Origin: Styela clava
Lineage: Eukaryota
Direction: 5' to 3'
Length of the DNA: 64,000 nucleotides
Assembly: GCF_964204865.1 (NCBI RefSeq)
Contig: NC_135262.1
Coordinates: 12,152,001-12,216,000, forward strand
In this document: in pieces, positions 3,321 to 57,352 of the stretch
Position numbering within the stretch: the first letter of the stretch is position 1
Layout of the letters: each line of letters opens with the position of its first letter
Position numbers and translations under genes: made by a program
The notes under the pieces: model-generated
Database searches by the model: none
Told to the model about the DNA's origin: nothing
Seen by the model: only the letters and a program-made list of their open reading frames with translations

Positions 3321-4646
3321 CAGGGGTGTGCAACCTTTAATACAGGAGGGCCAGATACAAGTAACTGGGTGAATCCGCGGACCGCATCTAGAAACTCTAC
3401 CTACGAAAGGCTCTGGATACGAAAATATTGCTCCGGCTAACGTAAGATTTTTTACATACGAAAGGCCGAAAACCTAAATTTGTTTATTTTAGGTTAATTT
3501 TATGCAGTGCTTGAAGAATGGTTGTCCTATTCCGATATCGCAACCTTCGAATATCGTTTTTCGTGTTTATAAGAATGCCCAAAAGGGGGACATATCCTAT
3601 AATCCTAGCGCCGCCGTCCACGTTTTGATTTAAAATATTTTACAATTATTTTATTTTTTATCGTAATCGAAGGCAGCCATGTGCGGTGCGGCAATAAATT
3701 ATCCCCTGCCCGTTTGTTACCCGCGGGTACGTACAACGTGTTGCTAGCGAAATTCAGTGAGAAGGCGATGATACGCGCGTAACAGTTAAGACAAAAAAAT
3801 GGAAAAAAAAATATTGAATTTTATGTGTGTGTGTGCTCATTTTCGTACATTATGTACTCTCTTAGCTGTCAACTTTTGCTGCCTCTTCCCACCACCTCCG
3901 ACCACCGTCCTCTTACTGTCCGCGGTCTTCGTTTAGCCTAGTCGGCCAACGCCAAAGGTAAACAAACGGTTCGTAGTTTTTATTCGGTATTTCTCTGTTC
4001 TTTCTTCTTTCCATGTGTGCCTTTTTTGTTGATTATGCAGTAAATCTAATTTTAACATGAATTTTTTACGTGTTTTAACCATTATTGTAATTTATACAAA
4101 TATTATGTTTAGTTCTGTGGAGGCTTAGAATGGATTATGGCATTTACAGGTAAAATGCGTCCCTACTTACGGAATTTTCTACCTACGAAGGTTATTCCGG
4201 AACTAATTAATTTTGTAGCTAGAGTTTCTACTGTAGTTGCAAGCACAAAAAATTGTTTCTTTTCGTTATTGATCTTATTGTTAGGGGTCCTTGCAGAACT
4301 GTTGAGTTAATACGAGAAAATAAAGAAAATTCGTGTGCAGCAAGACTCTTGAATTTAATAATATAAAGAAAACTGCTATTCAAACTGATTGTCACACCGA
4401 CTTTAAACGAATTCGCTGAGAAATACGTTTTTATAAGATTGTGTATATTGCAAAAGGATTTTGCTTGCTAGTTTTGCTAATATGACAATGGCACGTAGGT
4501 ACTGGTAAAAGCTTTGTGACGCAAAGAGATTGTAATTGCTCGCGTGTACCAGAATAACTAAGCAAAAAAATTCGCACCATTCAAAATTCGCACTTCTCCG
4601 CGGGCCGCACAAATTTTATTTACGGGCCGCAGTTTGCACACCCCTG
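3321..4646. mobile_element. hAT non-autonomous element
   Basis: TIRs CAGGGGTGTGCAA / TTGCACACCCCTG; perfect 8-bp TSD GGCTACGT (3313-3320, 4647-4654). Confidence 0.9.
3385..4233. mobile_element. Tc1/pogo (Tigger-like) MITE nested in the hAT element
   Basis: Right end GTAGCTAGAGTTTCTACTG followed by TA; degenerate left end TAGAAACTCTACCTACGAA; internal TACGAA repeats. Confidence 0.6.
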
Positions 4647-7738: not shown

Positions 7739-9352
7739 TCACTTCCAACAGAGTTTTTCACAAAGTTCGCATGAAATATCAACGCGAATTCTCTTCTTGC
7801 CCTTTCCGCGTGTTTTGTTGTGCTTTGATCGTTTTACTGTAAACAATAAAATCAAGAGTTCAATATTGCATATATATTTATGTCGTTATATGGCAAGGTG
7901 TTTTTGCTATGGTACGGCTAAAAGTAATACTACTCCCAACCAACGCAATGTAAATTTACGAATATAATTCAATAGTAACAGAATCTTTACCTCTGTTCAG
8001 TGCAACCTCGCTATTGTCTTCGATGCTCCTTTTGAATATCGTTTGTATTTTGCAACTTGAAAACATTGTTTTGCACGTTTGACGGATACTTGGAGCACAT
8101 GATGCCATTAACTTCTTCAGAAATTTTCTACAAGAAAAAAAAACAAGTATGTTATTGAGTATGTCAATTTCGTGATAAAGTGAAACTATTTTTTACATGC
8201 CTCAACAAAAATTGAAAAACCGAAGATATATAGTTTACTTAGCTTGGTGGGATACTCATGCATTGTTTAATTGTGTTTGTTTTTAGCACTAAGGCTTATG
8301 ACAAGGTCGTGCTCGGGTATTTGATGCCGCGGGGTGATGTGTCAATATGAAAACCGCGAATTCGCGTGAATTTTGGAGGAAAATTAGAATTGTCCCGCTT
8401 CGAGACATCGTGTGGTTAACAAGCCGGAAATTTGATCTACTAATAAATCTGAATCAAAATTAATGGGATTTTGCCAACATTTCATTTATTCGTTTTCTTT
8501 CTGATTTTCCCATGTATGCTGAATTAACATATTGCCACGTTTGGATGATGGATATAACTGTTTTAATGTAAGGTTATCAACCTGTAATTGAATGGTTTCG
8601 ACGTGGATAAGCAATCCCAGCATATTGCTTTCATGTGGTAAAATTAAAGATCATTTATAATCGTGAGAAATTATCAATTTTTTTTAACAGGAAGTACGAT
8701 TTATAAATTAGGTAATTAAATTGTTTAATTGAAAACATTTTCACAAATTATCACACTACCACTTAGACAATTATATTCTATAAATAAAATCGTTTAGAAA
8801 TGTACTAAATTTTAGCTCGGGTTTTTCTGGTTTTCAATGAAATTGCTTCTTTATACTGTAAGTCGTTAGCCAGTAATGAAATCAGTTATTTTTGGCTATC
8901 AAAATAAAATGTTGAATAAAACTTTTCTACCCTCCTCGATCAAAAACAAAACAAGTACATTTTACTTGGAAGTAAAGTACTAGCTAGCAACCAATAAAAT
9001 ACTAATTATTACTAACTAATCGAGCCTATATCGTCGAACAGATGGTTTGTCATCAATTTCACTCAATTGAAAGTTTTTCTTACCTTCGGCGTATTCGTCT
9101 GCTATTCGGGGCATCTCTGTAGGTACTTGGCTCATCTTCAGCTTTAGCATTGGTGTTATCGTCACACTCTTTTTCCTCTGTTTTTATTCTTTCCTTTTCA
9201 GCTGCTATCTGTCGTCTCAAAAGTTTCATTTTTCGTGCCAAAGTTAATCGATTCAACGCAGCTCTTTTGACCGACATTGGCGCAGAAGACACACATGCGA
9301 TGACAACTGCTGTCATTGCAAGTACAGCAATAAAATATGTACTCTTCAACAT
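7739..9352 (-). CDS. Secreted Cys-rich prohormone-like precursor A (167 aa, 3 exons), unknown family
   Basis: Exons 9352-9084, 8127-7991, 7836-7739 with canonical GT-AG introns (phases 2, 1). Product: MLKSTYFIAVLAMTAVVIACVSS-APMSVKRAALNRLTLARKMKLLRRQIAAEKERIKTEEKECDDNTNAKAEDEPSTYRDAPNSRRIRRR-KFLKKLMASCAPSIRQTCKTMFSSCKIQTIFKR-SIEDNSEVALNRVKR-SKHNKTRGKGKKRIRVDISCELCEKLCWK. Structure is corroborated by the paralog at 19644. Confidence 0.9.
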
Positions 9353-9482
9353 TTTTGTTTCAATTCGAATTGTTCTATTTCAAAAACTTTACCACGTGTC
9401 CGTGATTTTTTGCCTTTACAAAAAATTTTTATTTCTGGCGATTGACAAATAAAATATCTGTCAAAATCATCAATACCGTCGC

Positions 9483-9488
9483 TTTATA
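9483..9488 (-). promoter_or_regulatory. TATA box of precursor A
   Basis: TATAAA on the minus strand ~130 bp upstream of the ATG at 9352. Confidence 0.55.
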
Positions 9489-10766
9489 TCGTTGATATGA
9501 GAGAAAATTCACCTTTTTTTCTCGAATCGTGATCACCGTTTGGTTGCATCTTCAATCCTCTCTCAAGTGTGTCAACGTGGTCAAATTTCTCCGTTTATCG
9601 ACGTTTTTGTATGATTAAATGTTCGGGATGTAGGAAGAGCCTTGGGCAAATTTTTGGTGAAAATAGACTACACTGTTGCGAGGTTATATCGATGACTTTA
9701 ATCTGTTATTATTATCAGGAAAAACTGGGGATTTCTCCTGTGGTTTATTTTCAACTTTCGTTACATTTACGTAAGCAACCACTAAATAACAATTTTTACC
9801 TGTCAATCGAAATATAAAAGAACTGCTTGCATTAAATTGTTGTTTTTATGTGCGTTGATACAAAACACAACCAATAATATACTTCGGGCAGACAAGTATA
9901 ATTGCAGGATGTTAAATCACACCATGGGATGAATGCGGGATTTCAAGGGTAGGGCATGTGAAAAAACTTTTACAACATCACGATATCACCACGATAACCT
10001 TTTTCTATGCCGACCGTGTATAAATTATGCTATTCAATCAGTCGAGTTGTTTTCAAATTCGGGCTTGATATAATAATTTTTTGATCAGACTTAAAGAAGT
10101 TAGCCCGTTTACTCTATCCTGCATTGGTAATCAGGAACTCGATGCTTAGGTAGCAAAAGTATTCACTGCGAGAGAATTCTAATATTCATTTTATATTGGT
10201 ATTATGTTGATTTCTGCTTCCACATACGTTGTTTTCGCGTAATACTTAGTCTGCAAATTTCATAAAAGTTGGTCCTCCTCACATACGACTGTTTACGAAA
10301 ACATTATTTCATGCTTGTTTTCACGGATCTATTTATTATATATATATATACACTATCCTAGTTACGGTTATATCATGATTTACAGTGTGCTAACGCACTA
10401 ACATTAATGTGAATAATTGTAGTTTCGAAAAACAGGGCTGGAGAAGATAGTTTGAAGTTGAACAATTCTGTTCAGATCAATTGCATCTACATACCATCAA
10501 ATGACGAGAAACACTCTTTTTCGAAATAACACCTGGTAGTACCCAGTAAATGGTTTCGTATTCCATATAATTATGAAATTTTAACCTCCACATTATGCGG
10601 CAGCAAGTTTTTTGGTGTTACGTGATTTGATGTAGATAGCATGCTCTGGGCGAGAATTGTACCTAACAAATATGTATGGTTTTCTGCTGGATAATATTAC
10701 GTAACCACCTCCTCTGCAAAGCACTGGTTACTATTACCAATAACGTGAGTTAGTCAGGATTCAAAA

Positions 10767-10777
10767 GGGAAATCCCC
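10767..10777. promoter_or_regulatory. NF-kB/Rel-like site
   Basis: GGGAAATCCCC fits GGGRNNYYCC; related sites at 9727-9738 and 12485-12494. Confidence 0.4.
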
Positions 10778-10959
10778 AATATGTAACCACTGTCACTTGA
10801 GAGCGCAATACTAACGCAACGCGACTTTCTCGAGTTTTCAATTGGGAATCTACATGAACGAAATCGGAATGTTGCTTATTAATAATGGGTATTATTACTG
10901 TGCGGATACTTTGTCCAGTAATGTTTGTCACCTGCTGAAACTTCAAAAATTAATATATC

Positions 10960-12480
10960 ACATCTAATACTATAATAACATAGGTTTACTGTGTCATACT
11001 AGGACGGAGAATGATTTTCGAATGACTAACACATGATTGCGGGTTTCACTCTTCGGATTTTGGTAAATTTAGATGCCGCCGTAAAATCAAATAAACTCGG
11101 GGAATTCTTAAGCTGGTTTCGATGTTTCGAAACGTAATGTAGGAATGTATCTAGAAAACAACAGACTCTTTGGATTACCGGATTAAGTTTATGGTATTAG
11201 ACAACAATTTGCTTTTTTCAATTTATCATTTAGAATCACTTCTACTCCATGGGAGTTCAGAGCTGCGTAGAAAAATATCTATGCGTATAGATTGTTAATA
11301 GTATATAATTAACATATTTATTTCATATACAGTATATTTATATGTAATTTAAAATTTTCAATATCGCTTTTCGTGGAATTATGAAGAAATCGTGACATTT
11401 TCAGCAAAACAAATATAGAATTCCACCTCCTAGAAAGCGTTGTGGCTTCATTACTTCGTCGGGATTTATAATGAAGTATAAGTCAAATTGATTTTCAAAC
11501 CAAATTGTGTCATTTTGTGGAGTAATTATATACATTATAAACAGTCTGAAACCCAAGCGACCAATCTAGTTTTTATTGTGGGTTGCCTGTTTCTGTTATT
11601 TTTTCAGTATTTACCGCATTTTATTAATACAAAGTAACCACATTCTCTGCCAGACACTGGTTGAAAATACCATTGCTTTGGTTGGTATACTGCAAGAGAA
11701 GTTGAAATGCATGGCTTCAAAATAGATGGAAGTTGGCCCTATTATTTTCTAGTTACGTTTTAAGATTGTTGCAAAACATTCAAAATTAAATAAGCTCATA
11801 TAAATATATATATGAGCATTTTTTCACATTCGGGAACTAGTTAAACGAAATTGTAATGTTGCTTTTTAAATATTGGTGTTTCACAAATGTTTCCGGGTGA
11901 TGTCTGCCATGCCGTCTGATAAAAAAAAACATTGAAAACTGAATCTATTACAGCATGACATTAGAGGTTTTGATATTATAGGTTCAAATCACTGTCGTGA
12001 CTGATTATTGTGGGTTTCACTTCTATGGATTTTGGTAAAAATTTGATGACTACCACGGAATTAAATAAATCCGGAGAATTTTTTAATATGCTTTCATACT
12101 AAGTTTCGAAAGTATAATTTTACAACCTCTCGACAAGTCTACGTAATTAATTGCATGTTGAAATCTGTAGGTGCGGTTTACATGTCAGCTAAAGAGAAAC
12201 ATATCGTATATAATATAAAACTAAAAAGAAATTTTAATATATACATTGGTATATAATACATGCATATTTATATGTATATACTAATTATTCTCACTTTAAT
12301 TCTTATTGCATTAAGATAAAAATTGTGATATTTTTAGCAAGACAATTAATAGAAACCCGGTGCTATATATAGGTCCTGCGTCGGATTATGTCATCATGAA
12401 AGCGAAGTAAAGTTTTAAGTCAAATATTTGTCGAACACTATAAACATACTGGAATTCAAACAACTAACCTAGTTTTCGAC
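10960..12480. repeat. Old diverged tandem duplication of non-coding DNA (~0.9-1 kb offset)
   Basis: GGGTTTCACT..GGATTTTGGTAAA at ~11041 and ~12012; GTGACATTTTCAGCAA / GTGATATTTTTAGCAA at ~11392 and ~12325; TATAAACA..CTAGTTTT at ~11536 and ~12439. Confidence 0.7.
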
Positions 12481-15400
12481 AGCAGGGAGATTCCAAGGGT
12501 TTGTTTAAATTGCTGTATTTATCAGAAAATGCGCTGAGGTTATTGGTTGACCTAGTTCTAAGTTCTATATTATTTGCCACATGCCACCAATTATAACAGT
12601 TTTAGATAAATAAACAAAGTATCTTGTTTCATTGGGGAGAAGTTAGCGCATCATGGCTCCAAAAATAAACCGAATACACATAGGATTTACTTTCTATTTA
12701 CCATTATATCCGACTTGTTATTTATAAGTAAATATTTGACTTGAATAAGTTATGAGCATTACAGGTCGCTTTTGGTTAAAATAATGTTTCTTCGTTTCTG
12801 ATAAAGAGTTGTTTTAATGATTTCAAGTTAGTTTATGATTTTTCAATCCATCATGCGTTCTCGATGTTCATCTTGAATTTCTATCTGGCTGCATGCTTAA
12901 AAAACATATGCATAACCCACATATGCTCAGATTTACATTACATTATAGTTTGTAACATCATATTATTAATTGTTAAATTCTACGAATTTCCTGCGGGTAA
13001 ATCGGTAAGTTTTCCTCGCCTTGAAGAAATTGTGATCAAAATATTAGGTTCATGCATAAGTAAATAGATGAAGTCATGAAAAGATTGTAATTCCGATAGT
13101 AGAGTGGGAACGCTGCTGTACTGAAGCGCGAATCGGAATACCGGAACATAATTAATTCAAATAAAAGTGTCTGTAAGTGTACGTAACAAAGATGCTAAAC
13201 GCCTTTTGAACAAAAAAACGAATTTATTAGCAATTTTTCGATTTCAAGTAAGTATCCTGACAATCACTTGTTGCCTATGAGGCTAATTTGCTTAAACTGG
13301 GCATGACCCGTTAATGATAAATTTGGAATTTTGATGTCTTTATTTGCAAGTTCAGGTTACACAAGCCTTTCATTGATCGGCTTATCTACTTGAGAATTAT
13401 ATTAGTATTAGTTAAAAATTTGAATTTCGTCGGAATGCTGAAAGCTATACAACAATGGACTTAATATAAACAAAAACAATCATTGAACATAAACAAAAAT
13501 TCCGATTGCCCAAAGCGACTAAAATCTAAGTGAAATTCTAACTAACCCATTATATAAACACTAGGGAATAAGTAAAGATAATTTTAGGCGAGGCAGAAAT
13601 GCATAAACAATTGTACATGCTTAACCATCCTATTTTGTTTACAGGAAACTACCTGAAATTATCGTGAGACTGTTTCTGTTGATAAACTATGAGAGGGAAT
13701 GTTTTTAGGCAAAATCGGAAAAATCGTATCGGTATTGAAGGTTATTTTAAATGTTATTCATACGTTTTAATTGTATTATATATCAATTAATTTATATATA
13801 TCAGGTCACTATACATATTTATGCATTCGACTACATTAGTTGGCTAGCTATTTGTGTACATCAAATTTTAAATATTTGAATCAAATTTTGTTAACCATTT
13901 TTTACTGTATTTCTCGTCCTGTACTTGTTTCGTACGTTTACATGTTTATCTATGTTAAATTGATGGAAAGTGCATTTGAGGGAAATGAAAAAAAAAATGA
14001 ATCTATTATAAAAAAAAAATTGTGCGACACTGATACAACAATATTAATTATTTTTGAGCTCTGCTTTTGTGTCTGGGAGCACCCATGTGTTTGTGTTATC
14101 CAAATCCCATAAATGGCAGATTGTACGTTATAACAAAAGTAAGCCTGAATCTATTAATCTAAACTCAATTATGGCCCGGCAGTTTCGTTTGTTTAATGTT
14201 TACTAAAGTTCTGATATTCAGAGTAAACAACGCAAGCTCCGGTGACGTCAGAACTACTGAAAATAAGTCAAACAATCTATTTTGAGAGGAACGTATCGTA
14301 CATCATACATTACATGCCGAACTGATTGTGTCGTGCACTGTTTATACGAGCAGGTGCTTAGGAGAATGTGGTCGATTTTAAAACTAAATATAGCGTTTTG
14401 ATTTTATCGTAATTAATGTTTGTAACTAATTTTATCTGCTTTTATAGAAATTATAGATACAACATCTACTAGAATTAATGCACGCTGTAATGGAATTTCA
14501 AAATTGATTATATTTTAAAGAAGTATTATGTCAATAGGAGTGTAATAAGAGATTACCCGATCTTTGCACAAATCCGTAACTACGCCTAAATAGTTGATAT
14601 ATTTATTGTCATGTGGTAATACCGTATCGAGTACCGTCTTTTTCTCCAAAACGCTTTCCCAACGTTGGAATAATATCTCAGTGCTTACAGGCACATACAG
14701 GGAAAATTAATCCTGTAATCTTTCGGGAATCCGAACTACTCGGCTTTTACTAAACACAGTCGCTCTTGGGTATCAGTGACATTACTATCAGTACGATTAC
14801 TATATTCAATATATTGACAAAAACGTTTTGGCTGTGACTAGAGAAATAGGAGAATTATCATTATCCGGAATCACACATTCGTCACTCATAGTTTCACCAA
14901 ACTTTTTCTATTCGACATTTACATTCTTTCTTGATTTATCTGCAACCCAGGTTGGATGTACTGCTTTTCATCAATATTCGCGAAAAACGTTAAACGGGAA
15001 CATCGAATTTCCTCTATATTATTCTCCTGCCCAAGCCAACCGCGATACCACGTTTCTAAACAGAAGAAAATCCTCCTTATTCAAAACGGAAGTTTCATGT
15101 GTTGAAGATGTAGGAGAATGACTATTTTACTCCCAAAGAAAATTCCAAAGATTTAAGATTACAAACCCACAAATCACGTACTGAAACAAAAGGGGAAGCC
15201 AAAAACTTCCCTGTCTGTATAAAAATAGTGAATTCAAATTAGTAAATTACTAATTAGAAGTAAAAGAAATTTACGTTAGAACGCACTGTTTCAATTTTAA
15301 ATAGAAAGAAGTGCCATATCAACTCCTTTTTGTTTTTTGGAATTTTCTCTTTCTCAGATGTTGAACTTGGTATAGATAGACATTTTCATTGATGTAAATC

Positions 15401-18400
15401 GATATTTGATAAAGTAGCCTCAATTGCAACTGAAGTCCACCTTATTATAGAATACATGTTTGCATCATTTGCAGTGGTTGACGCATAGAAATTGTTTGCT
15501 TATGGCATCCGAACAGGTTGATTATGAGAACTACCAGCGAAAGATCTTCAACACCCCTAAGTAATTAATATTCCCCTGTAATTTTTCGTGCTCTGAGTCA
15601 TGTTTAAAAACTGACCGTTCACATTTTTGAATGACCAATTGCATGATGTCCCCCCTTGTGTCAACATTTTTTGTCAATCATATTCGAACAGAAAAACAAA
15701 ATTTTCAGTCAAACGAGTCTGTTTTGAATATTTATAACATATTTGAAATATTTTCTCGAATGATTACGTACAATATAGTGAAAGCGAATATTTTGAGTTA
15801 ATATCGTATGTGAGAACTCACGTTTCTATTCCAAAACCTTTGTTTATGACGTCAGTAGTAACATAATCAAAACAATTAGTTTCCGTTTGTAAAAATATTT
15901 TACCTTCGAATCTGATTTACAATATTTGGAATTTTTCTTTCAAAATCTGGCTTAAAATCCAAATAGTTTTATGAATATATATATTTTGTACTCGTTCTTT
16001 ATTTGGACACATCTGTTCCACATGTTGTAAAAATCAGTAGAGTATATATATATATATAATAATATATTTTACAGCAACTATAAGCATTATGTATGGAGGT
16101 TTCATGCTTTTGCTTCGCTACGAAATCACTTAGTTATACCTGGGATGAGCCTGGGCTCGATCTTTCCAGTCACGAGTGAGTAAATGAATAGGCTAAATCA
16201 ATTGGCAGATATAGAGGTCGCGACAGCATTGGTCGACTTCATCGCAAATATACAGAAATCTGGCAAGGAAAAATGATTAAATATAATATTAATCATCAAA
16301 GTAATTATAATCCTTTTTATTAAAGAATGATTTAAAACGAATATTCAAAATTTTGTTTTTGCCAAGTAACGATCCTGATTAATCTACGACCCTGATGAAA
16401 CTCCAATTCGTCATTAATTTCAGTTCTGGGGTTGATGTCATACAAACTGATAAATTGCACGAATACTGTCGATGTTGACGACACTTTTGAAGCTTGAAAA
16501 ATACAAATCTCCCCACTTTAAAAAGCATTGGTCATATCGGGTGTGGATTTAACGAAAATTACGGAATTAATAAAAAAGAAATCGATAGCCTAAATTGATT
16601 GACGTCATATGTCATACAATAATCACAAAAGGATTTCAAAGATATTCTTTATAATATACTCAAACATCTCAAATGGGCACGCTTTGACTCAGTTGTTTAC
16701 CAAGACTGAGTATTCAACGATTGGAACCAATGACGCAAGCTTCGATTCAAGTATTGCAAAATTTACAAGAAATTGGATATTTTGAAAATAAATCCCCAGC
16801 AAAATTTATCGGGAAATTTTTACGCGATTCACATTGTTTCATCCATGATGAGGATACCAAGGAGTTATGTCCACGCTCTGGAAATGATCAGTGTGACCAC
16901 CATAACGACCGATTTGTGGAAAGCAGAGCGTCTTTTAAAATGCAAATTCGCTATTTTTTTTATTAGCTCATACTTTCTCAAAATAATGCACCATAATACT
17001 AGAATTTTCCAGTGCAATATGGTTACCAAAATATAAACATGAACTGACTTTAAGTGGTCATAAAAGCATTGTGAATAAAATGCTGATTTCTGTCGTGTGG
17101 TAACCGACAAAAAAATAAATATAAAATATTTACGATAAATGAAAGCTCCAAGTTGTGAATGTCATTTTTGCGTACATTGCTCTTTTGCCTATAAATATTT
17201 GGATATTTTTACAAGAGCGATAATTTTCAAAAATGAAATGTCTCAAGTAATTAGAAAGAACCGATTTTTTGCTTTTGGAACAATGCAGCAATCTGGCTGA
17301 CTGACCAAATATTACGCGGAACGTCTCTAATCGTGATATTTCGGGACTACCTGTCAATTCAGACAGCATGTCTACACTTTTGTTTATTCACCGATGGGTC
17401 ATTGATGCTGTGCGGTTTTATGACAATTTCTGACTTGTTGAAAAACGAATCACGTGTGTCGATTTGGTAAATATACGTCAGTGACTTTGAATCATGAATG
17501 GCTTATAACTTAAAAACAAAGAACTACTTCAAGTGATTGTCACAAAAAGACACAATTCACTGGAGATAAATGCGTCATGATCTCAATTTGAAGCAACAAC
17601 AGCGTGTCAGAGAGTTCAGGCCATCACCCCGTTGGTGTATCATCGATACATGCTAGGGATTGACACGTTCCTGAAAGAACAAACGAGCATTGTCATATTA
17701 CTGATCCATCATAGATTACTATGTGATTTAATGCAAATTGCATATTTTGTAGATAAACTGGGTGAATGAATATTAAAATAATCATTTGACGTGTTTTGAA
17801 TGAAAATATTGTAATTCGTGAACCCGGCATTGCCTTAGTTCCTGTATATTTAAAAATATATATATATATATAAATGATTGTAAATCAGATTGGGATTTTG
17901 AATTCTTGTTCAACTTCCATTTTTAAATATAAACGGCCTAATTTTGCTTCCGGAAAATTATCCCCAGTCTATGCACTTGAGAGTCCTTGAACATTCAAGC
18001 AGCCACTTAGAAAATACACCATTCGAAAGTAATTACGCGCAATTATGCAAATACAAAAGAGATGTTTGTAATTGAGCTTGAAATGAACAGACAGAAATCC
18101 CGATCTATAGTTAATTGCATCACATTTCTTTCTTTGAATTACGCGTCTACGATTCTCACTTATCATAGTTATAAGCAAGGCCAAACCATTCTATGATACT
18201 GTAAAACGAATAATAAATGTAAATAAAGATAGTCATTTGATTTGCTTTCGAATTTTGAACCTACTTTATAGAGTTTCAAATTTAATAATTCTGGTTCGCC
18301 TTCAATTTTTTGTTGGGATTTTAAGTTTGGGCCGGGCTATTGTTATTAAAATTATTAAGCAAGATTACAAATACTGCTGTAGTGTTCAGATATAAACTAT

Positions 18401-19552
18401 TTTGGAGATATATTATCCAGATTTCATTTTTATTGCTATAAGCTTAATTTTCGTGGGCACATATAGCTGCTTTGCAATTTTTGTAGTATATTCGTTATAA
18501 GGATAAAGTATTAAAAGTTGGATTTTATATTTTCAAAAACACAGTGTTGCCAAACAAACATCAAATCATCACACAAAGGTAGCGCGGAACAGTTTCCACC
18601 TGGAGGCGCTCTTCAAAACACACTGATTCAGAATTCAGTGAAGTCATTTGGAATATCAGTTAGATGTGGAAAATCCAATCATAAAGATTCAAAATATTTT
18701 TTTCTTTATATCATCTACTACATGAGCGATGTAATGTGGAATAATATATTTAAACAACGGTGTACATCATGTTCAAGTTTACAATTGAACTTTCGCTGAT
18801 AAAACATGCAGGAAGTTTAAAATTTTCTTCTGTTGGTTATGATCGCACTGTAAACATAGCCACATGCTTTATTTTATTTCAGATAATTTAAACATTGTAC
18901 AGCCAAAATAGATTGTAAACGTAAACCATGTTTCTGTACTGAAACAACAAGACGGAAATTCCTATCTTTTTTAAAAATCTATGACAACTATAATGAAAGT
19001 ATGAACAATTTTAGTATCACGTGATACGTTTCTAAACATTAATTTCTCTCGAAATTTTATTGAATAACTTTATAACAATTTGGACAAATCATCCCGTTTA
19101 TGAAAGTTGGAAGGGAAGTCACATCTCGATAAAAATAGAATTCATTGCTGTTTCATACCCTGGCAACGAGTATAACGCAATCTACCATATTATTACCGAT
19201 ATAAAGTTTTATAGGATTTGACTTTCAGACCCGCCTTATTTAAATATTTTAGTGAGATCATTTTCGGTAAAATACAATACAACTAAGCCAAACCAGAATT
19301 ACTATTTGTCTAGCTATTGCGATATATACATCACTTACTTAAACTAACGATTCTATTTTTAGCACGGCATTGACTTAAATGATTTTAAAATTATTTAAAA
19401 GTTTAACAGTATCGCTCATTTCAGTAGACGTTTCATTAAAAATATATTTACGAATCTTGTCTACGACACTCTCCAAACACGCAACATCGTGGTCTGAATC
19501 ACGCCTCATAGAATGTATGTTTTCTCTCGTTTTCAATCGCTGTACAGTTTAG

Positions 19553-19559
19553 TATAAAA
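19553..19559 (+). promoter_or_regulatory. TATA box of precursor B
   Basis: TATAAAA ~90 bp upstream of the ATG at 19644. Confidence 0.6.
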
Positions 19560-19643
19560 GCCTAACTCGTTCGTCTTACAGTCAGATTTATGAGAAACTA
19601 CAGCGCTAATAGCAAGTCTGAAATAAGTATACGTGATATCAAG

Positions 19644-20775
19644 ATGGCCCAGTATTCTTCAACACCGCGCAGTCACATTCTTCTGCTTTGCCTACTTTTA
19701 CTTGCCTTGGCTATATCTACCTCAAACTCAGCACCGTCGTACAGGCCACACTTCAATCAAATGAACATTATACAGAAAATAAAATTTTTGGAACGAAAAT
19801 TATCATTGTTGCGAAATCGTAAAACGAAATGTCACAAACAAGTTCCAGATGCGCCAAAATCCGAGACTCCAGATCAAAATAACAACGAGAATACAGATTG
19901 GTCGCAAAGAATAAGGTATTTCATGTTTTATAATGTCTAATACTTTAATACACTGTATTATGAGTTGCTGTGTCTGGTACTGTAAACAATAGATTGTCGT
20001 TTATTTTTTTACTATATGAATATTCACTTTGCATGACAATCAGTAAATATTTGTCAAAACGTCATCCTGTACAAACAAAATTAATGATGAACCAGTGTTA
20101 AGCTAGCCAAAATATGATCGTAATGATTTATCTAACTATGTAGTAATAGTATGTTTGTCTTTATAAGTCAGAAAATTTTACAGTTCTATCTCAGTCTGTG
20201 AATGCACAACGTTACATTTTCCAGTTTATATCTTACTGCATATTTAAATTGTTACTGCGACCTACTTGATCGTACAAATTCAATTTTATATTGGTCGATG
20301 ACAATATATTTTTTAATTTTAGACAAACTTATGAAAGAGTTACGTCTTCGTGTGGGCTAATAATGCAATCAAGATGTAAAACAATGACAAGTCGATGCCA
20401 CGTTTCAATGCTTTCAAAACGTAGTATTCCAGAAGACGAAAACGGTGACGTCGTAGAAAGAGGTATGTTTGAAATCTATGTAGTCATAATATGACCATTA
20501 TGAATGGAATGTAAGAAAAGCGCTATTCTTATCGATAGTCCTACATTCATCGAAACTTGATCATTTCGAAACGCGGTGATTAACATTGCCATGATCCTTG
20601 GCATACGTCGTATTAATGTAAATAAAAATAGAGACTGTGCAGTGATTATTTAAAATATATTAATTTGAATATGTATTTTTCAGTAAAGAGAAGCTCATAC
20701 TCAGTGTCTCGACGAAATCGCGGGAAGAAAATTAAAGTTACTTGCAACATGTGCAGAATCAATTGCTGGAGTTGA
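19644..20775 (+). CDS. Secreted Cys-rich prohormone-like precursor B (167 aa, 3 exons), paralog of precursor A
   Basis: Exons 19644-19915, 20323-20462, 20684-20775, GT-AG, phases 2, 1 as in A. Product: MAQYSSTPRSHILLLCLLLLALAISTSNS-APSYRPHFNQMNIIQKIKFLERKLSLLRNRKTKCHKQVPDAPKSETPDQNNNENTDWSQRIR-QTYERVTSSCGLIMQSRCKTMTSRCHVSMLSKR-SIPEDENGDVVERVKR-SSYSVSRRNRGKKIKVTCNMCRINCWS. An in-frame upstream ATG exists at 19590; AATAAA at 21280. Confidence 0.9.
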
Positions 20776-21545
20776 AAAGTCTCATTAAGGACAAGTCGAA
20801 AAATAACTTCATCGACTGTACAATTAAAACAACTGGCCTGAGGCTAATAATCCTTCAAACAAAACAAGAAATTATAAGAGCAAAGTTGCATAAGAGGAGA
20901 GTTACACGTACAATGATGCTACAGGCACTAAAATGGAATGTGCACAGTTACCTCGAATTTGTCATTAAGGACTAACTAATCACTGTACATTGTGGAAACG
21001 AAAATTGCCGTTCTTCAAAGTGGATCCTGCCGTAAAATCCTAATATAAAATTTCTCGTATACTTCATGAATATCGCGATAATTTTTATAGCCTACTTTGA
21101 GAGGCCTATGTGATATGAACAATTATGAATGCGATTTGATAGATTTTGACATTGAAAATATTTTTTAATCATTATTTGTAAACTTTCCTACGAACGTATT
21201 TTTTTATTCAATCATCCTACCTTTTTGCAACTCATATATTTCGTTTATATATTGTGAATTAATTTATATTTACATATTTAATAAATTTATAATTTATATA
21301 TAACATTATTCAATTATTTTTACATGAGTTTTACATACACGCTATATTCAGTTCATCACGCGGTTGGTCAGACCGTCACGAACGCAACGTTGTAAACGGG
21401 TCAGGAATCGAATGCCACTCGCTTGCAATTTGAATATAATGAGTTCATCAAACTATATAATTAGTATCAGAATAAGTATATATGTATTGATGTCAAACAT
21501 TCTGAGAAAATGATGCGATCATGCGACATCGTTTACTGAGTTTTT

Positions 21546-26285: not shown

Positions 26286-27033
26286 TGCAGACTAAATTTT
26301 TAATCGAAATAGAGAATATACGATTGAATCCTAAATGTCACGTTATTGGCATGCGATAACGACAGTCGACTTAAAAGTATGTTTGTCCGCGCATTTCTTT
26401 GCATTAACGCGTTACGCATTCGTCCTCAAAAAAAGATCATTTCTGGCATCACAAATCACAAGTACGCGAACAAAAATAGACAAATGTTTGAAATATAAAT
26501 ACAGTAAGCGGCAGCTACCCTTAGCATCCGGCTTCGACGTTCTGTAGCACATGCTATGAACAGCACAGGGTTAATGAAACCATGAGCAATCAACCGTATC
26601 AGTAAATATATCCGTCGCTCTTTTAATAAGCTGACTTGTCTCGCATAGTCGTATTAGCAGCAAAATTTACAAAGTCAGTTCTTTTTGGTGTACTATAACA
26701 AGAATATTGTCATCTCAGCCTCAGAACTGCGATTTATTTATTTTTCACGTTATACTTGAGTGATTCTTAGGTTTGATCGGGGTCGAGTTGAGGTGAAAAT
26801 GCCAAAAAGTGAAGATATTTTGTAATTCGTAGAAGGGTAAATTACGCCGAGTCATTATGTGTATTTTCTAAGTTAGCGGGTAAATATATGCGTGCTTCTA
26901 TCTCCATCAGCGAAGCAAGTTTGTGATTGAATATGTATAGCTAAAATCCTTTTAGATATTCTAGGTGTGTACCTTTATACACGAAATAAAAGTACTTACA
27001 GATAAAATTGCGTATAGGTATCTTTCATATACC

Positions 27034-27795
27034 ATGTCGCTTGCAAGACTTGTAGGAAAAAGCACACTTGTAACCGGAGGCGGAAGTGGAATAGGAAGAG
27101 CAATTTGTCAGGTGTTTGCAAGAGAAGGTGCAAGTGTAGCAGTAATTGACATCAACCGTGACGCTGTATCTGAGACTCTCGATCAACTGCCGAGGAACCA
27201 TGGCAACTTACATTGCGCCATTGAAGCTGATGTGACCTCATCCGGAAGAGTCAAACACGTTTTTGCAGAAGCAAAAGATAAGCTGTCCAAAACAAGCACC
27301 ATCCTAGTCAACAACGCAGGTATTATTCGTGGCGATCTACTACTGGATATGAAAGATGATGATTTTGATGACGTCATCAGAATAAATTTGAGAGGATCGT
27401 TTCTTATGGCTAGAGAATTTTTGAGATCATTGAAAGATGCAACTGATATTAAAGGCTCCTTGGTGAATATAGCAAGTATCGCAGGAATAACAGGATATTT
27501 CGGGAATGCGGATTATTGTGCTTCAAAACATGGAGTAGTTGGATTGACAAAAAGTATCGCATTGGAATATCCGAAACATAAAGTACGGTGTAATGCCGTG
27601 CTACCGGGTATAACCGACACACCAATGGCACAATCATTCGATCCAAAGAAAATAGAACAAGGCGTGAGACAAATACCGATGCGAAGATTGGCAAAACCCG
27701 AAGAAATTGCAAATGCTTGTTTATTTTTCGCATCAGATGAAAGTTCATACGTCAATGGAGCATGCTTAGAAGTAACGGGAGGACTTAATGTTTAA
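27034..27795 (+). CDS. HSD17B8: Short-chain dehydrogenase/reductase, HSD17B8 / 3-oxoacyl-ACP reductase-like, intronless
   Basis: TGGGSGIG Rossmann motif, NNAGI, catalytic YCASK, C-terminal SSYVNGACLEVTGGL. Likely start is MSLARL at 27034. Confidence 0.85.
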   Translation: MSLARLVGKSTLVTGGGSGIGRAICQVFAREGASVAVIDINRDAVSETLDQLPRNHGNLHCAIEADVTSSGRVKHVFAEAKDKLSKTSTILVNNAGIIRGDLLLDMKDDDFDDVIRINLRGSFLMAREFLRSLKDATDIKGSLVNIASIAGITGYFGNADYCASKHGVVGLTKSIALEYPKHKVRCNAVLPGITDTPMAQSFDPKKIEQGVRQIPMRRLAKPEEIANACLFFASDESSYVNGACLEVTGGLNV

Positions 27796-34477: not shown

Positions 34478-35411
34478 ATGTCTCGGCAAGGAACATATTC
34501 ATATGTGGAAGCATTTATTCAAAAAACTATTCCTAAAATAAAAGAGCGAGATTTGAAAACTTTGAAGTCATCTTTGAGAAACAAGCCTATTATGTTGGTA
34601 GGAGAACAAAAGAGAGCTAAAAAGAGAAAACGTGAAAAACAGAATAAGAGAAGAATAAAGAATCGCATATTGGCGAAACCTACAAATTCAAACTATCAAG
34701 ATTATGAAAAACTGCGTATTTTATGGATGGAATACATCACAGATTTACTCTCGGATTATCAGACATTAAAACCAGGAGAAACCAAACCATCTTTGGATAA
34801 CAAAAACGCACAGGAAGTTTTGTTGAAAGCAGATTATCATGGAGCAGATCTGTCTGTGACAGGTTCACCTTGTAAATCTCATTTGGGTTTGAGTGGAACA
34901 GTCCTTCAGGTGTGCCAATATATCTGTATTATTAACCTTTTTTATTAACTCATTTTGTCCTTGTTTTGAAGTGCACTGGCACAATATGTGATTTCATCAT
35001 ATATCAATGGTATTTACAGATTCAATACTAATTGGTGATTGCACTCTACACATGCAACTTTTGACCTCATAATATATAGAATAAATTATTATGTTTCCTG
35101 ATTATGATAACTGGATGACTTGGTAATTCGTTCAAAGGATTGTTCAGTGTGTTAAATATGCATACCAATATTTCCGTTTTTTTATTAAATTAAGTTATTT
35201 TATCTCATTTTTTCAGGAAACAAAAAACATATTTTTGATCTGCACCAAGGAGAACAAATTAGTGAGAATTCCCAAGAACAAGACTATATTCACATTGGAA
35301 TATTCTGGATATCTTATAACAATATTCGGATCACAATTTTGCTTCAAGCCATCTCATAGACTCATGAAAAGATTTACGAAAAATCCACGCTTAAAAGAAC
35401 TTTTGCGATGA
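34478..35411 (+). CDS. POP4: Ribonuclease P/MRP subunit p29
   Basis: Exons 34478-34909 and 35217-35411. Motifs LWMEYITDLL, LLKADYHGADLSV..S.C...G.SG.V.QET.N.F..T..N.L..IPK....F, and the C-terminal GSQF..KPSHR. Confidence 0.9.
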
Positions 35412-54619: not shown

Positions 54620-57352
54620 ATGGCCTCTGTCGAAGAGAGCGATTATATTTGTCGTGTATGTAGATCTGAAGGTTCCCAAGACAAACCACTTTATCATCCA
54701 TGTATTTGTACTGGAAGTATACGATATGTACATCAGGACTGTTTGGTACAATGGCTTCGCCACAGCAAAAAAGAATATTGTGAATTGTGCAAGCATAAGT
54801 ATTCGTTCAAGCCAATTTATAGTGCTGATATGCCCACTCGTCTGCCAGTAACTGACCTCGTGTATGGGTTATTCCGCAGCATATTCATGGCTGTAAGATC
54901 ATGGTTGCATTATACCTTGGTAGCGGTGGCTTGGTTAGGTATTGTCCCCCTAACCGCTTGTCGAATTTATAAATGTCTTTTTACCGGATCGGTAAGATCT
55001 TTACTGAGCTTACCAATGGATATGCTTTCTACTGAAAATGTAGGACAGGATATTTTATGTGGATCATTGGTCGTGGCTTGCACGATGGCTTCTTTCATCG
55101 GATTAGTGTGGCTTCGCGAACAAATCATGAATGGTGGCATGCCAGGCTGGCTAAATAGAAACGGTCCTGATAACGTCGCTGTAGCTCCGAATGCAGAAGT
55201 TGCGATAAATGATGATAACAATAACATAGAACATGGAGTCCCGAATGCTGAAGATATTGTTGAACAAGAAGAGGATGAATCGGATGATTCTGAAGACATA
55301 GATGAGGAGGAGGAAGATGCGGAACCAGAAGAGATTCAGCTGGATGGTGCTGAAGTTGAAGATCTGGAGGAAAATGAAGTGGATGTACAAAATGAAGGAG
55401 ATGATGGCAATTGGAATGCACTTGAATGGGATAGAGCTGCGGAAGAATTAACGTGGGAAAGAATGTTGGGACTCGATGGATCTCTAGTTTTTCTCGAGCA
55501 TGTATTCTGGGTTGTTTCACTCAACACTCTTTTCATTCTTGTATTTGCATTTTGTCCGTATCATCTTGGACATTTTGTTCTTGCAGCGGTTGACCTTGAT
55601 GTTTACCTCGTTGCTTCACGATTCGAAGGATTCCTCACCACTTTATTCGGATACGTTATTTTGACCGTGGCATTTTTTGTGTGTCATGCTGCTATGTTTT
55701 TGTTGAAAATGCAACGATCTGGAAGAGTTCTTGGGATTTTGTATATTGTATTGAAAGTAGCTCTGCTAGTTATGTTTGAAATGGGTGTTTTCCCACTTGT
55801 ATGTGGATGGTGGTTGGACATTTGCTCACTACAGCTTTTTAATACAACTGTTCAAGAAAGAGTTACTAATTACATAAATTCACCTGGAACGTCGACTTTT
55901 TTCCATTGGTTATTAGGAATGATTTATATATTTTACACAGCTTCATTCATGCTGCTTTTAAAAGAAGTTTTGCGTCCTGGCGCATTATGGTTCCTACGCA
56001 ATTTAAACGATCCGGATTTCAACCCGATTCAAGAAATGATCCACTTACCATTGTACAGACATATTCGAAGATTTTTACTTTCAGTCGTTATATTTGGATC
56101 TGCAGTTCTAATGATGATTTATTTGCCAGTGCAAATGATACTTCGTTATTCACCCAACTTTCTACCATATCATGTTAATTTACGTAAAGATGTTCCAATC
56201 AGTGATTTATCTCTTGAACTTATCCTACTGCAAGTTATCATACCTGCTTTACTAGAGCAAGGCCAGACAAGGCAATGGTTGAAATCAATAATAAAGATTT
56301 GGGCGAAAGTTGTTGGTACTTTACTAGGTGTAAAGTCATATCTTCTTGGTGATACTGACGGCGATGCCAGAGCTCAAAATGAAAATCAAATTCAACCTCA
56401 ACGGGCGGTAAATAATAATGATGAAAATCAAGAAGAAGTTCCAGTTGTGCCATTTCAGCAGCAAAATTTACACCCAGAACCACAACAGATGGCTTTAGAT
56501 GGCGAGATACATCAACCCTATACTCGCCCAAATTATTTTGTGACTAGAATTGTGCTTTTGCTACTTTTAATGTGTGCAACGCTTTCATTGATCAGCCTTA
56601 CAGTAATGGTCGTACCTGTGGGAATTGGACGATATTTATTTAGTTTGTGGTTAGGTACTGAAAATGCTAATTTTATACATGATTTATATCCTACAGCTTT
56701 GGGGTTATATACATGCTGGCTGATGGGACATTTGGTAAACTTATCAATGGTATGGTTTCCTCGGGGTTCAAGAGCGATTTGGTCAGAGTGTAAAACATTG
56801 ATTAAAATGATTTCTAAAATTGCGATTGTTGGGGGTTTTGTTTTTGGATTATTTCCACTATTGTTCGGATTGCTTTTTGAGCTGGTAATCGTAATTCCAT
56901 TGAGAGTACCTTTACACCAATCTCCTCTTAATTTTCTTTGGCAAGATTGGGTGCTTGGAATTCTTTTAGTTAAGTTAGCAGTTGCTTTAACCTTGCTCGG
57001 CCCCCAATGGAAAATAAGAATTGCTATAGAGAGGGTCTTTCATCAAGGACCTAGAAATTTCAGTCTTCGTGATATGTACGTTGATGTTATTCATCCCATT
57101 ATGTGTAGTCTTTTATTATCTTTAACTGTGCCATATGTGATTGCTCATTCGGCCACATATGTTTTAGGTTTGCCACACGATTTTTCAAATATTTTATTAC
57201 GTCGTATATATCCTTGTCTCATTTCCTTTTTTGCACTAGTTTCTTTTCTCATGTTTGAAGCGAAGCAGTTTCGTCGATTGTGCGATCATATCAAAAATGA
57301 ACGTTATCTTGTTGGGAAAAGATTACTCAATTACGAGCCTGCTAAAGCCTAA
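54620..57352 (+). CDS. MARCHF6: E3 ubiquitin ligase MARCH6/Doa10, intronless CDS
   Basis: RING-CH domain (ICRVCR..PLYHPCICTGSIRYVHQDCLVQWL..CELC), WDRAAEELTWERMLGLDGSL, TD region GWWLDICSL, and C-terminal IKNERYLVGKRLLNY. Confidence 0.97.
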   Translation: MASVEESDYICRVCRSEGSQDKPLYHPCICTGSIRYVHQDCLVQWLRHSKKEYCELCKHKYSFKPIYSADMPTRLPVTDLVYGLFRSIFMAVRSWLHYTLVAVAWLGIVPLTACRIYKCLFTGSVRSLLSLPMDMLSTENVGQDILCGSLVVACTMASFIGLVWLREQIMNGGMPGWLNRNGPDNVAVAPNAEVAINDDNNNIEHGVPNAEDIVEQEEDESDDSEDIDEEEEDAEPEEIQLDGAEVEDLEENEVDVQNEGDDGNWNALEWDRAAEELTWERMLGLDGSLVFLEHVFWVVSLNTLFILVFAFCPYHLGHFVLAAVDLDVYLVASRFEGFLTTLFGYVILTVAFFVCHAAMFLLKMQRSGRVLGILYIVLKVALLVMFEMGVFPLVCGWWLDICSLQLFNTTVQERVTNYINSPGTSTFFHWLLGMIYIFYTASFMLLLKEVLRPGALWFLRNLNDPDFNPIQEMIHLPLYRHIRRFLLSVVIFGSAVLMMIYLPVQMILRYSPNFLPYHVNLRKDVPISDLSLELILLQVIIPALLEQGQTRQWLKSIIKIWAKVVGTLLGVKSYLLGDTDGDARAQNENQIQPQRAVNNNDENQEEVPVVPFQQQNLHPEPQQMALDGEIHQPYTRPNYFVTRIVLLLLLMCATLSLISLTVMVVPVGIGRYLFSLWLGTENANFIHDLYPTALGLYTCWLMGHLVNLSMVWFPRGSRAIWSECKTLIKMISKIAIVGGFVFGLFPLLFGLLFELVIVIPLRVPLHQSPLNFLWQDWVLGILLVKLAVALTLLGPQWKIRIAIERVFHQGPRNFSLRDMYVDVIHPIMCSLLLSLTVPYVIAHSATYVLGLPHDFSNILLRRIYPCLISFFALVSFLMFEAKQFRRLCDHIKNERYLVGKRLLNYEPAKA

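What the first reader, a model, noticed from the sequence alone, without database searches (positions are those of the whole stretch)
7739..20775. Divergent pair of paralogous secreted precursors: candidate new two-chain peptide hormone/cytokine family
Seen in sequence: two head-to-head 3-exon genes each splice to 167 aa with identical intron phases (2, 1). Overall identity is low, yet the skeleton is invariant: signal peptide ending S|AP, a basic amphipathic helix (LNRLTLARKMKLLRRQI / FNQMNIIQKIKFLERKL), one lone Cys, RIR(RR), chain 1 with SC-x7-CKTM-x-S-x-C-x6-KR|SI, an acidic linker, RVKR|S, then basic chain 2 ending C-x2-C-x3-CW-x-stop. Established: KR and R-x-K-R are prohormone convertase and furin sites. 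Inference: the linker is excised like the proinsulin C-peptide, leaving two chains with 3 Cys each. An odd number per chain implies at least one inter-chain disulfide. The spacing is not insulin/relaxin (2+4 Cys), and I recognise no named family.
Basis: partly seen in the sequence, partly recalled or inferred. Interest (0 to 1): 0.95.

Follow-up and report, generated by a model that had tools for sequence, protein, structure and literature searches.

The report
Tunicate cysteine-rich secreted peptide precursor family
Two neighbouring genes of the sea squirt Styela clava belong to an unnamed seven-gene family of small secreted precursors. Their conserved cut sites and six cysteines suggest an insulin-style two-chain peptide, but processing and function are untested.

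Summary
Both 3-exon genes splice to 167 aa with intron phases 2 and 1. Both introns of the plus-strand gene are confirmed as GT..AG joints in contigs of four runs from three studies. The models equal NCBI proteins of Styela clava named only "uncharacterized".

The pair is part of a larger family. Profile searches of the same genome find seven members. One protein of Clavelina lepadiformis and one exon-2-like piece on an unnamed ENA contig also belong.

Invariant in the seven S. clava genes and the Clavelina protein are C-x7-C-x6-C, a KR before the last segment, and C-x2-C-x3-CW at the C-terminus. An acidic linker (pI 4.1-4.5, 7-34 aa) is always flanked by dibasic sites, and a basic tail follows. 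The pro-region cysteine, the S|AP signal end and RIR are not family features.

Pfam, PDB sequences, phmmer against 1.84 billion proteins, the ESM Atlas, Foldseek and VIA found no known family. AlphaFold2 models are weak.

Best reading (0.45): a tunicate-restricted prohormone-like precursor cut into two disulfide-linked chains. Cleavage, disulfide map and function are inferred, not shown. Interest is moderate.

The parts
9084..9352 (-). Gene A exon 1 (ATG at 9352): signal peptide, basic helix, acidic pro-region with Cys63, and the RIRRR site. It ends in phase 2.
   Evidence: Equals NCBI XP_039255928.2 (P0007).
7991..8127 (-). Gene A exon 2: chain 1 with C-x7-C-x6-C (8052-8099), KR at 8028-8033, and the acidic linker. 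It ends in phase 1.
7739..7836 (-). Gene A exon 3: the end of RVKR, then basic chain 2 (7742-7828) ending C-x2-C-x3-CWK, then the stop.
19644..19915 (+). Gene B exon 1 coding part: signal peptide, helix, pro-region with Cys63, and RIR. RNA contigs start as far upstream as 19473.
19590..19643 (+). In-frame upstream ATG used by the NCBI model (185 aa). It is probably 5'UTR: there is a T at -3, whereas 19644 has A at -3 and G at +4, and the paralogues start at the signal peptide.
   Evidence: The reading as 5'UTR is inference.
20323..20462 (+). Gene B exon 2: chain 1 with C-x7-C-x6-C (20351-20398), KR at 20417-20422, and the acidic linker.
   Evidence: (joint 19915|20323).
20684..20775 (+). Gene B exon 3 coding part: the end of RVKR, then chain 2 (20692-20772) ending C-x2-C-x3-CWS, then the stop.
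   Evidence: (joint 20462|20684).
20776..21226 (+). Gene B 3'UTR. Contigs end between 21039 and 21226.
   Evidence: table 8.
9353..19643 (.). 10.3-kb stretch between the two divergent genes. It has no Rfam match and no convincing ORF.

Best explanation
Genes A and B are two of seven Styela clava members of a tunicate family of roughly 165-aa secreted prepropeptides. The family is also present in Clavelina lepadiformis.

Proposed mechanism:
1. The signal peptide directs the precursor into the secretory pathway.
2. Kexin-type convertases (furin, PC1/3 or PC2 type) cut at the conserved sites: a basic cluster before chain 1, KR after chain 1, and x-KR (RVKR in A and B) before chain 2.
3. This removes the variable pro-region and the short acidic connecting peptide.
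4. What is left is a roughly 30-aa chain 1 (C-x7-C-x6-C) and a basic chain 2 ending C-x2-C-x3-CW.
5. Each chain carries three Cys, so at least one disulfide must link them.
6. The product acts outside the cell, most likely as a signalling peptide.

Shown: the gene models, the splicing of B, the paralogy, the family size, and the conservation of the cysteines and sites.

Inferred: secretion, cleavage, disulfide linkage and a signalling function.
For: - Gene models and phases.
- Spliced RNA contigs in four runs from three studies.
- Paralogy with z = 20-37.
- Seven loci in the genome, each with an exon-2-like and an exon-3-like piece in the same phases.
- Relatives in Clavelina and on an ENA contig.
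- Six Cys, the KR before chain 2 and the CW are invariant in the seven S. clava genes and the Clavelina protein. KR(S) follows chain 1 in seven of the eight, and is RK in G.
- The linker is always acidic (pI 4.1-4.5) and varies from 7 to 34 aa. Chain 2 is always basic (pI 9.6-12.0).
- The linker is the least confident, coil-like part of both AlphaFold2 models.
- In RNA contigs of gene B, five amino-acid changes fall in the pro-region, while both listed exon-3 changes are silent.
- The genome has several loci for the proprotein-convertase P-domain.
- Established knowledge: KR and R-x-K/R-R are the recognition sites of PC1/3, PC2 and furin.
Against: - There is no peptide-level evidence of cleavage.
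- Basic clusters can also be structural or glycosaminoglycan-binding.
- The two-chain complex test gave no verdict.
- The AlphaFold2 models are weak (mean pLDDT 61 and 69). They disagree on the strands and give no confident contact between the chains.
- The tissue of expression is unknown because run names are coded.
- The site before chain 1 is variable and weak in some members (RIR in B, KKLSK in G).
- Exon 1 was not found for D and E.
- Fast-evolving multigene secreted families are as typical of immunity or reproduction as of hormones.
Confidence: 0.45

Rival explanations
1. It is a single-chain small disulfide-rich secreted protein, such as a cytokine, growth factor or matrix or tunic protein. 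The six Cys tie together one domain. The acidic linker is a surface loop. The basic motifs bind partners or glycans and are not cut, or only the pro-region is removed.
For: One AlphaFold2 model pairs a strand after Cys3 with a strand before Cys4, as in one compact domain. Six Cys would give three internal disulfides without any cleavage. There is no direct evidence of processing.
Against: KR is invariant exactly at both ends of a loop that varies from 7 to 34 aa and is otherwise unconserved, which is what cleavage sites look like. F and G carry several stacked basic sites in that stretch. The loop is predicted to be disordered.
Confidence: 0.2
2. It is a host-defence precursor. The cationic C-terminal C-x2-C-x3-CW peptide is an antimicrobial effector released at R-x-K-R. 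The acidic linker neutralises it during transport. Chain 1 either belongs to the pro-piece or stays attached.
For: Chain 2 has a net charge of +4 to +15 and pI 9.6-12, preceded by an anionic piece and a furin-type site. The family is multigene, fast evolving and lineage-restricted.
Against: Three Cys in the released peptide would leave one unpaired unless it dimerises or stays bound to chain 1. The three Cys of chain 1 are as invariant as those of chain 2, which is not expected of a disposable pro-piece. The conserved part of chain 2 is only about 14-16 aa, and in G it carries a modest charge. No match to any antimicrobial family in Pfam.
Confidence: 0.2
3. It is a very diverged member of a known family, the insulin/relaxin superfamily being the obvious candidate, with a rearranged cysteine framework.
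For: The precursor logic is the same: signal peptide, chain, dibasic-flanked connecting peptide, chain, and six Cys in total. A Gly follows the first Cys in most members, as in insulin B chains (own knowledge of insulin).
Against: The spacing is 3+3 (C-x7-C-x6-C and C-x2-C-x3-C), not 2+4 (C-x11-C and CC-x3-C-x8-C). No member matches PF00049 even at E <= 10. In this genome PF00049 matches three other loci and none of the seven. There are no PDB sequence or fold matches.
Confidence: 0.07

Closest known systems
Insulin/relaxin superfamily precursors, including the Ciona insulin-like peptides
   Same: Signal peptide, first chain, connecting peptide flanked by dibasic sites, then second chain. Six cysteines in total. 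The expected product is two chains held by disulfides.
   Different: The cysteine framework is 3+3 with other spacings. There is no profile match. A long N-terminal pro-region with a helix precedes chain 1. Chain 2 is strongly basic and ends in CW. With three Cys per chain, the insulin disulfide map (two inter-chain plus one inside the A chain) cannot apply.
Furin-released cationic Cys-rich peptides at precursor C-termini (hepcidin type) and guanylin/uroguanylin
   Same: A small Cys-rich peptide sits at the very C-terminus of the precursor. It is released at R-x-K/R-R or a dibasic site, after an anionic piece.
   Different: Those peptides carry an even number of Cys (8 and 4) and need no second chain. 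The spacings differ: guanylin has C-x2-C-x4-C-x2-C (own knowledge). No Pfam match.
Fel d 1 / secretoglobin heterodimers
   Same: Two chains with three Cys each, joined by three inter-chain disulfides (own knowledge). This shows that a 3+3 all-inter-chain arrangement exists in nature.
   Different: Those chains are about 70-90 aa, come from two separate genes and form a four-helix fold. Here the two chains of about 30 aa come from one precursor. There is no sequence or fold match.
ShKT domain
   Same: Six Cys, three early and three close together at the C-terminal end.
   Different: ShKT ends C-x3-C-x2-C and has a short loop between Cys3 and Cys4 (own knowledge). Here the ending is C-x2-C-x3-CW, and Cys3 and Cys4 are 41-58 aa apart with dibasic sites between them. 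No Pfam match at E <= 10.

Membership tests
Insulin/relaxin superfamily | B chain with C-x11-C and A chain with CC-x3-C-x8-C | tested here: not met
   All seven S. clava genes and the Clavelina protein have C-x7-C-x6-C and C-x2-C-x3-C.
Insulin/relaxin superfamily | Match to the Pfam Insulin profile PF00049 | tested here: not met
   No hit at E <= 10 for any member or exon piece. In the own genome PF00049 matches C6, C10 and C2, not the seven loci.
Insulin/relaxin superfamily | Connecting peptide flanked by dibasic sites between the two chains | tested here: met
   KR (RK in G) and x-KR flank an acidic linker of 7-34 aa in all eight. Actual cleavage was not tested.
Insulin/relaxin superfamily | Insulin fold with two inter-chain disulfides and one intra-A-chain disulfide | not testable with these tools
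   The AlphaFold2 models are of low confidence and gave no fold match. Three Cys per chain are not compatible with that map.
Guanylin/uroguanylin | C-terminal 15-16 aa peptide with four Cys (C-x2-C-x4-C-x2-C), and a Pfam match | tested here: not met
   There are three Cys, spaced C-x2-C-x3-C, followed by W. No Pfam hit.
ShKT domain | Six Cys ending C-x3-C-x2-C, and a Pfam match | tested here: not met
   The ending is C-x2-C-x3-CW. No Pfam hit.
Cationic Cys-rich antimicrobial peptide precursors | Anionic pro-piece, a furin or dibasic site, and a cationic C-terminal peptide | tested here: met
   Linker pI is 4.1-4.5, and chain 2 has pI 9.6-12.0 and charge +4 to +15.
Cationic Cys-rich antimicrobial peptide precursors | Microbicidal activity; expression in immune cells or barrier epithelia | not testable with these tools
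   Run names are coded.
Unnamed tunicate 3+3-Cys precursor family (defined here) | C-x7-C-x6-C, basic pair, acidic linker, x-KR, basic segment, C-x2-C-x3-CW within 0-1 residues of the stop; introns in phases 2 and 1 | tested here: met
   Met by A and B in the window, and by C, D, E, F and G. The Clavelina protein meets the protein features.

The most novel reading that the evidence does not exclude
This is a previously unrecognised tunicate hormone system. A two-chain peptide with a new 3+3 cysteine framework, joined by one to three inter-chain disulfides, is made by excision of a C-peptide-like linker and acts through its own receptor. It arose independently of insulin and diversified into seven ligands in Styela.
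Probability: 0.3. Interest if true: 0.8.

Novelty: new variant of a known kind. Interest (0 to 1): 0.55.

Why it matters
Tunicates are the closest living relatives of vertebrates, and their catalogue of peptide signals is still short. A conserved, expressed, multigene family with prohormone-type processing sites and a cysteine framework matching no named family would add a new class of candidate ligands. These could be tested against orphan tunicate receptors. It would also give a second, independent example of the design used by insulin: one precursor, an excised linker, two disulfide-linked chains.

If it instead proves to be a host-defence peptide, it adds a new disulfide scaffold. Either way the genes carry only the label "uncharacterized" in public annotation. 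Four of the seven members (D-G) did not appear among the protein-database hits.

Tried and rejected
- **Pfam** on the full proteins and every exon piece: only noise, with best E = 0.0087 to a DUF.
- **PDB sequence search**, single protein and profile: nothing, or spectrin noise on the pro-region helix.
- **Word-indexed homologue search**, three times (exon-1 ORF, C-terminal region, 4-row profile): only the S. clava proteins themselves.
- **ESM Atlas**: no usable hit by features. Structure rows have TM <= 0.37 and are unrelated.
- **Foldseek against PDB**: best E = 4.6.
- **VIA wide search**: Z <= 6, and only long-helix matches to residues 1-70, that is the signal peptide plus the pro-region helix. 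This is not informative about the Cys-rich core.
- **Complex prediction**, chain 1 against chain 2 of gene C: no verdict. It counts neither for nor against.
- **Metagenome scan** with the B+C exon-2 profile: one contig (L046, Ga0209092_10026429) shares only a 9-residue word and lacks the Cys pattern. It is a chance match. A first attempt with five rows had no searchable stretch.
- **Weak own-genome hits** at C5:8529072, C4:6988708, C10, C9 and C13:6250840: no family pattern, or not examined further.
- **Exon 1 of D and E**: not found within 3.7-4.6 kb upstream, either by signal-peptide scan or by tblastx between the two.
- **Paper searches** by locus names and by topic: nothing on this family.
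It was redone from references.
Full report
**1. The observation**

The window has no N. Gene B on the plus strand has coding exons 19644-19915, 20323-20462 and 20684-20775. Gene A on the minus strand has exons 9352-9084, 8127-7991 and 7836-7739. Each sums to 504 nt, that is 167 codons and a stop. All introns are GT..AG, and in both genes the phases are 2 and 1.

A and B are 29% identical. Without the signal peptide their local alignment scores 165, against 35 +/- 6.5 for 300 shuffles (z = 20).

Joined translations were made only inside local scripts from the window and locus files, to count and compare. Searches used single exons by reference, or database protein ids that turned out to equal the joined models.

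**2. Transcription**

Nine runs hold about 0.2-0.29 of the sampled words of 19500-20950, as expected if they hold only the exons.

Contigs of four of these runs, from three studies, were laid on 19000-21400. In every run they show the joints 19915|20323 and 20462|20684 (GT..AG), with no depth inside the introns. They cover 19473 to about 21040-21226. These are contigs, so transcript ends and expression levels cannot be read from them.

The contigs differ from the assembly by 1-5%. Among the listed coding differences in B, five change amino acids and all five lie in the pro-region (residues 49-75). Both listed exon-3 differences are silent.

**3. Identity**

The exon-1 ORF of B finds one protein at 100% identity: "uncharacterized protein LOC120332736 [Styela clava]", 185 aa. 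It ends with the 167-aa model and starts at the in-frame ATG at 19590.

I prefer 19644 as the start, for two reasons. It has A at -3 and G at +4, where 19590 has T at -3. The paralogues also begin directly with the signal peptide. This preference is an inference.

phmmer of this protein against 1.84 billion representatives found five proteins in all:
- B itself.
- Gene A: LOC120332693. XP_039255928.2 is identical to my model.
- A third S. clava paralogue, C: LOC144422019, 165 aa, on contig 4.
- A 155-aa Clavelina lepadiformis protein: LOC143451510.
- A mis-modelled ENA protein carrying an exon-2-like piece that is identical to none of the S. clava copies.

Styela and Clavelina belong to different ascidian orders (own knowledge). 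The family is therefore old within ascidians.

**4. Family size**

Profile searches of the window's own genome used the 4-protein alignment first, then exon-2 and exon-3 alignments. They give exactly seven loci with both an exon-2-like and an exon-3-like piece:

| Gene | Location |
|---|---|
| A, B | C17, 12.16 Mb, head to head |
| C | C4, 6.58 Mb |
| D, E | C13, 4.563 and 4.572 Mb, tail to tail |
| F | C17, 13.83 Mb |
| G | C17, 2.86 Mb |

All have a phase-2 acceptor before the chain-1 exon and a phase-1 junction before the last exon.

Exon 1 with a signal peptide was found for A, B, C, F and G, but not for D and E.

Core identities are 24-45%. Three pairs or groups stand out: B/C (with A), D/E and F/G.

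**5. What is conserved**

Invariant in the seven genes, and also kept in the Clavelina protein:
- C-x7-C-x6-C.
- A KR immediately before the last segment.
- C-x2-C-x3-CW, zero or one residue before the stop.

KR followed by S comes 5-7 residues after Cys3 in seven of the eight. In G it is RK.

Between the two basic sites lies a linker of 7-34 aa, always acidic (pI 4.1-4.5). After the second site comes a basic segment of 23-38 aa (pI 9.6-12.0, charge +4 to +15). In F and G further basic sites lie in this segment, so the conserved end of chain 2 is only about 14-16 aa.

Not conserved:
- The extra Cys of the pro-region. It is at residue 63 in both A and B, but absent in C, the Clavelina protein, F and G.
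- The S|AP signal end.
- RIR.
- The length of the acidic pro-region. Clavelina has almost none.

A helix of the FNQMN type is shared by B and C, and in weaker form by A, D and E.

**6. Mechanism**

The pattern is an unconserved acidic spacer of variable length, bounded by invariant dibasic sites, between two invariant three-Cys segments. This is the pattern of an excised connecting peptide.

KR and R-x-K/R-R are the sites of PC1/3, PC2 and furin (established knowledge). The genome carries several loci for the proprotein-convertase P-domain.

Three Cys per chain means that, if cut, the chains must share at least one disulfide or leave a thiol free.

The structure is not settled. With four rows, AlphaFold2 (mean pLDDT 60.7) gives:
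- a helix through Cys1 and Cys2;
- a short strand after Cys3;
- a disordered stretch at 122-148;
- a strand before Cys4;
- a helix over C-x2-C-x3-C.

With twelve rows (mean pLDDT 68.9), chain 1 is one long helix and the strands vanish.

The two-chain complex test gave no verdict.

**7. Comparison with what is known**

No Pfam family matches any member or exon piece at E <= 10 beyond noise. There are no PDB sequence matches, no usable ESM Atlas hit, and no fold match. The VIA rows cover only residues 1-70 as generic helices.

The insulin profile PF00049 matches three other places in this genome and none of the seven loci.

The cysteine spacings differ from those of insulin/relaxin, guanylin and ShKT. 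So it works like an insulin-type precursor in its layout, but it fails the tested membership criteria of that family.

Full-text searches by locus name and by topic found no paper on the family.

**8. Rivals**

- An uncut single-domain protein (0.2).
- A host-defence precursor whose cationic tail is the effector (0.2).
- A very diverged insulin relative (0.07).

A fast-evolving multigene secreted family fits immunity as well as signalling, and the tissue of expression is unknown.

**9. Limits**

- Other tunicate genomes could not be searched.
- D to G were not among the protein-database hits. Absence of hits from Ciona therefore says little.

**10. Verdict**

The two-chain product is well motivated but unproven. 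A hormone or cytokine role is a guess.

This is a new variant of a known kind (a prohormone with an excised linker). Interest 0.55.

Noticed in passing
window 19590-19643 and 19553-19559: The NCBI model of gene B starts at an upstream in-frame ATG (19590), which adds 18 residues before the signal peptide. A TATAAAA sits at 19553-19559, yet RNA contigs reach up to 19473, so transcription may start at more than one place.
   Followed up: partly
window 19000-19043: One contig of run X7 lies on 19000-19043 and runs beyond the left end of the laid stretch. It is an unexplained transcript or repeat about 450 bp upstream of gene B's RNA.
   Followed up: no
G000:C13:4563062-4563655 (+) and 4571766-4573255 (-) (L028, L029): Family members D and E lie tail to tail about 8 kb apart. 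Their chain-1 exon also carries the helix region, and their linker is 34 aa long. No exon 1 was found within 3.7-4.6 kb upstream.
   Followed up: partly
G000:C17:13826250-13827608 (+) (L030) and G000:C17:2854202-2857439 (-) (L031): Members F and G share CHWLT after Cys3 and an identical nine-residue C-terminal end. They lie on the same contig as A and B, and they did not appear among the protein-database hits.
   Followed up: partly
G000:C6:3057192-3057263, C10:3281217-3281342, C2:16884850-16884933: Exon-sized matches to the Pfam Insulin profile. These are likely the genuine insulin-like peptide genes of S. clava.
   Followed up: no
window 54620-57352, 26965-27795, 34478-34948, 59264-60931: Long single ORFs for a MARCHF6-type RING-CH ligase (910 aa, unbroken ORF), a short-chain dehydrogenase, an RNase P/MRP p29-like piece and a SPRY-domain protein. 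These are ordinary neighbours with no evident link to the family.
   Followed up: partly
L046 (Ga0209092_10026429) 3382-3480: This metagenome contig shares only a 9-residue word with exon 2 and lacks the cysteine pattern. It is a chance hit of the pattern scan.
   Followed up: yes
window 19644-20775: RNA contigs differ from the assembly at 1-5% of positions. The amino-acid changes cluster in the pro-region, which fits a highly polymorphic species and relaxed constraint on that part.
   Followed up: partly
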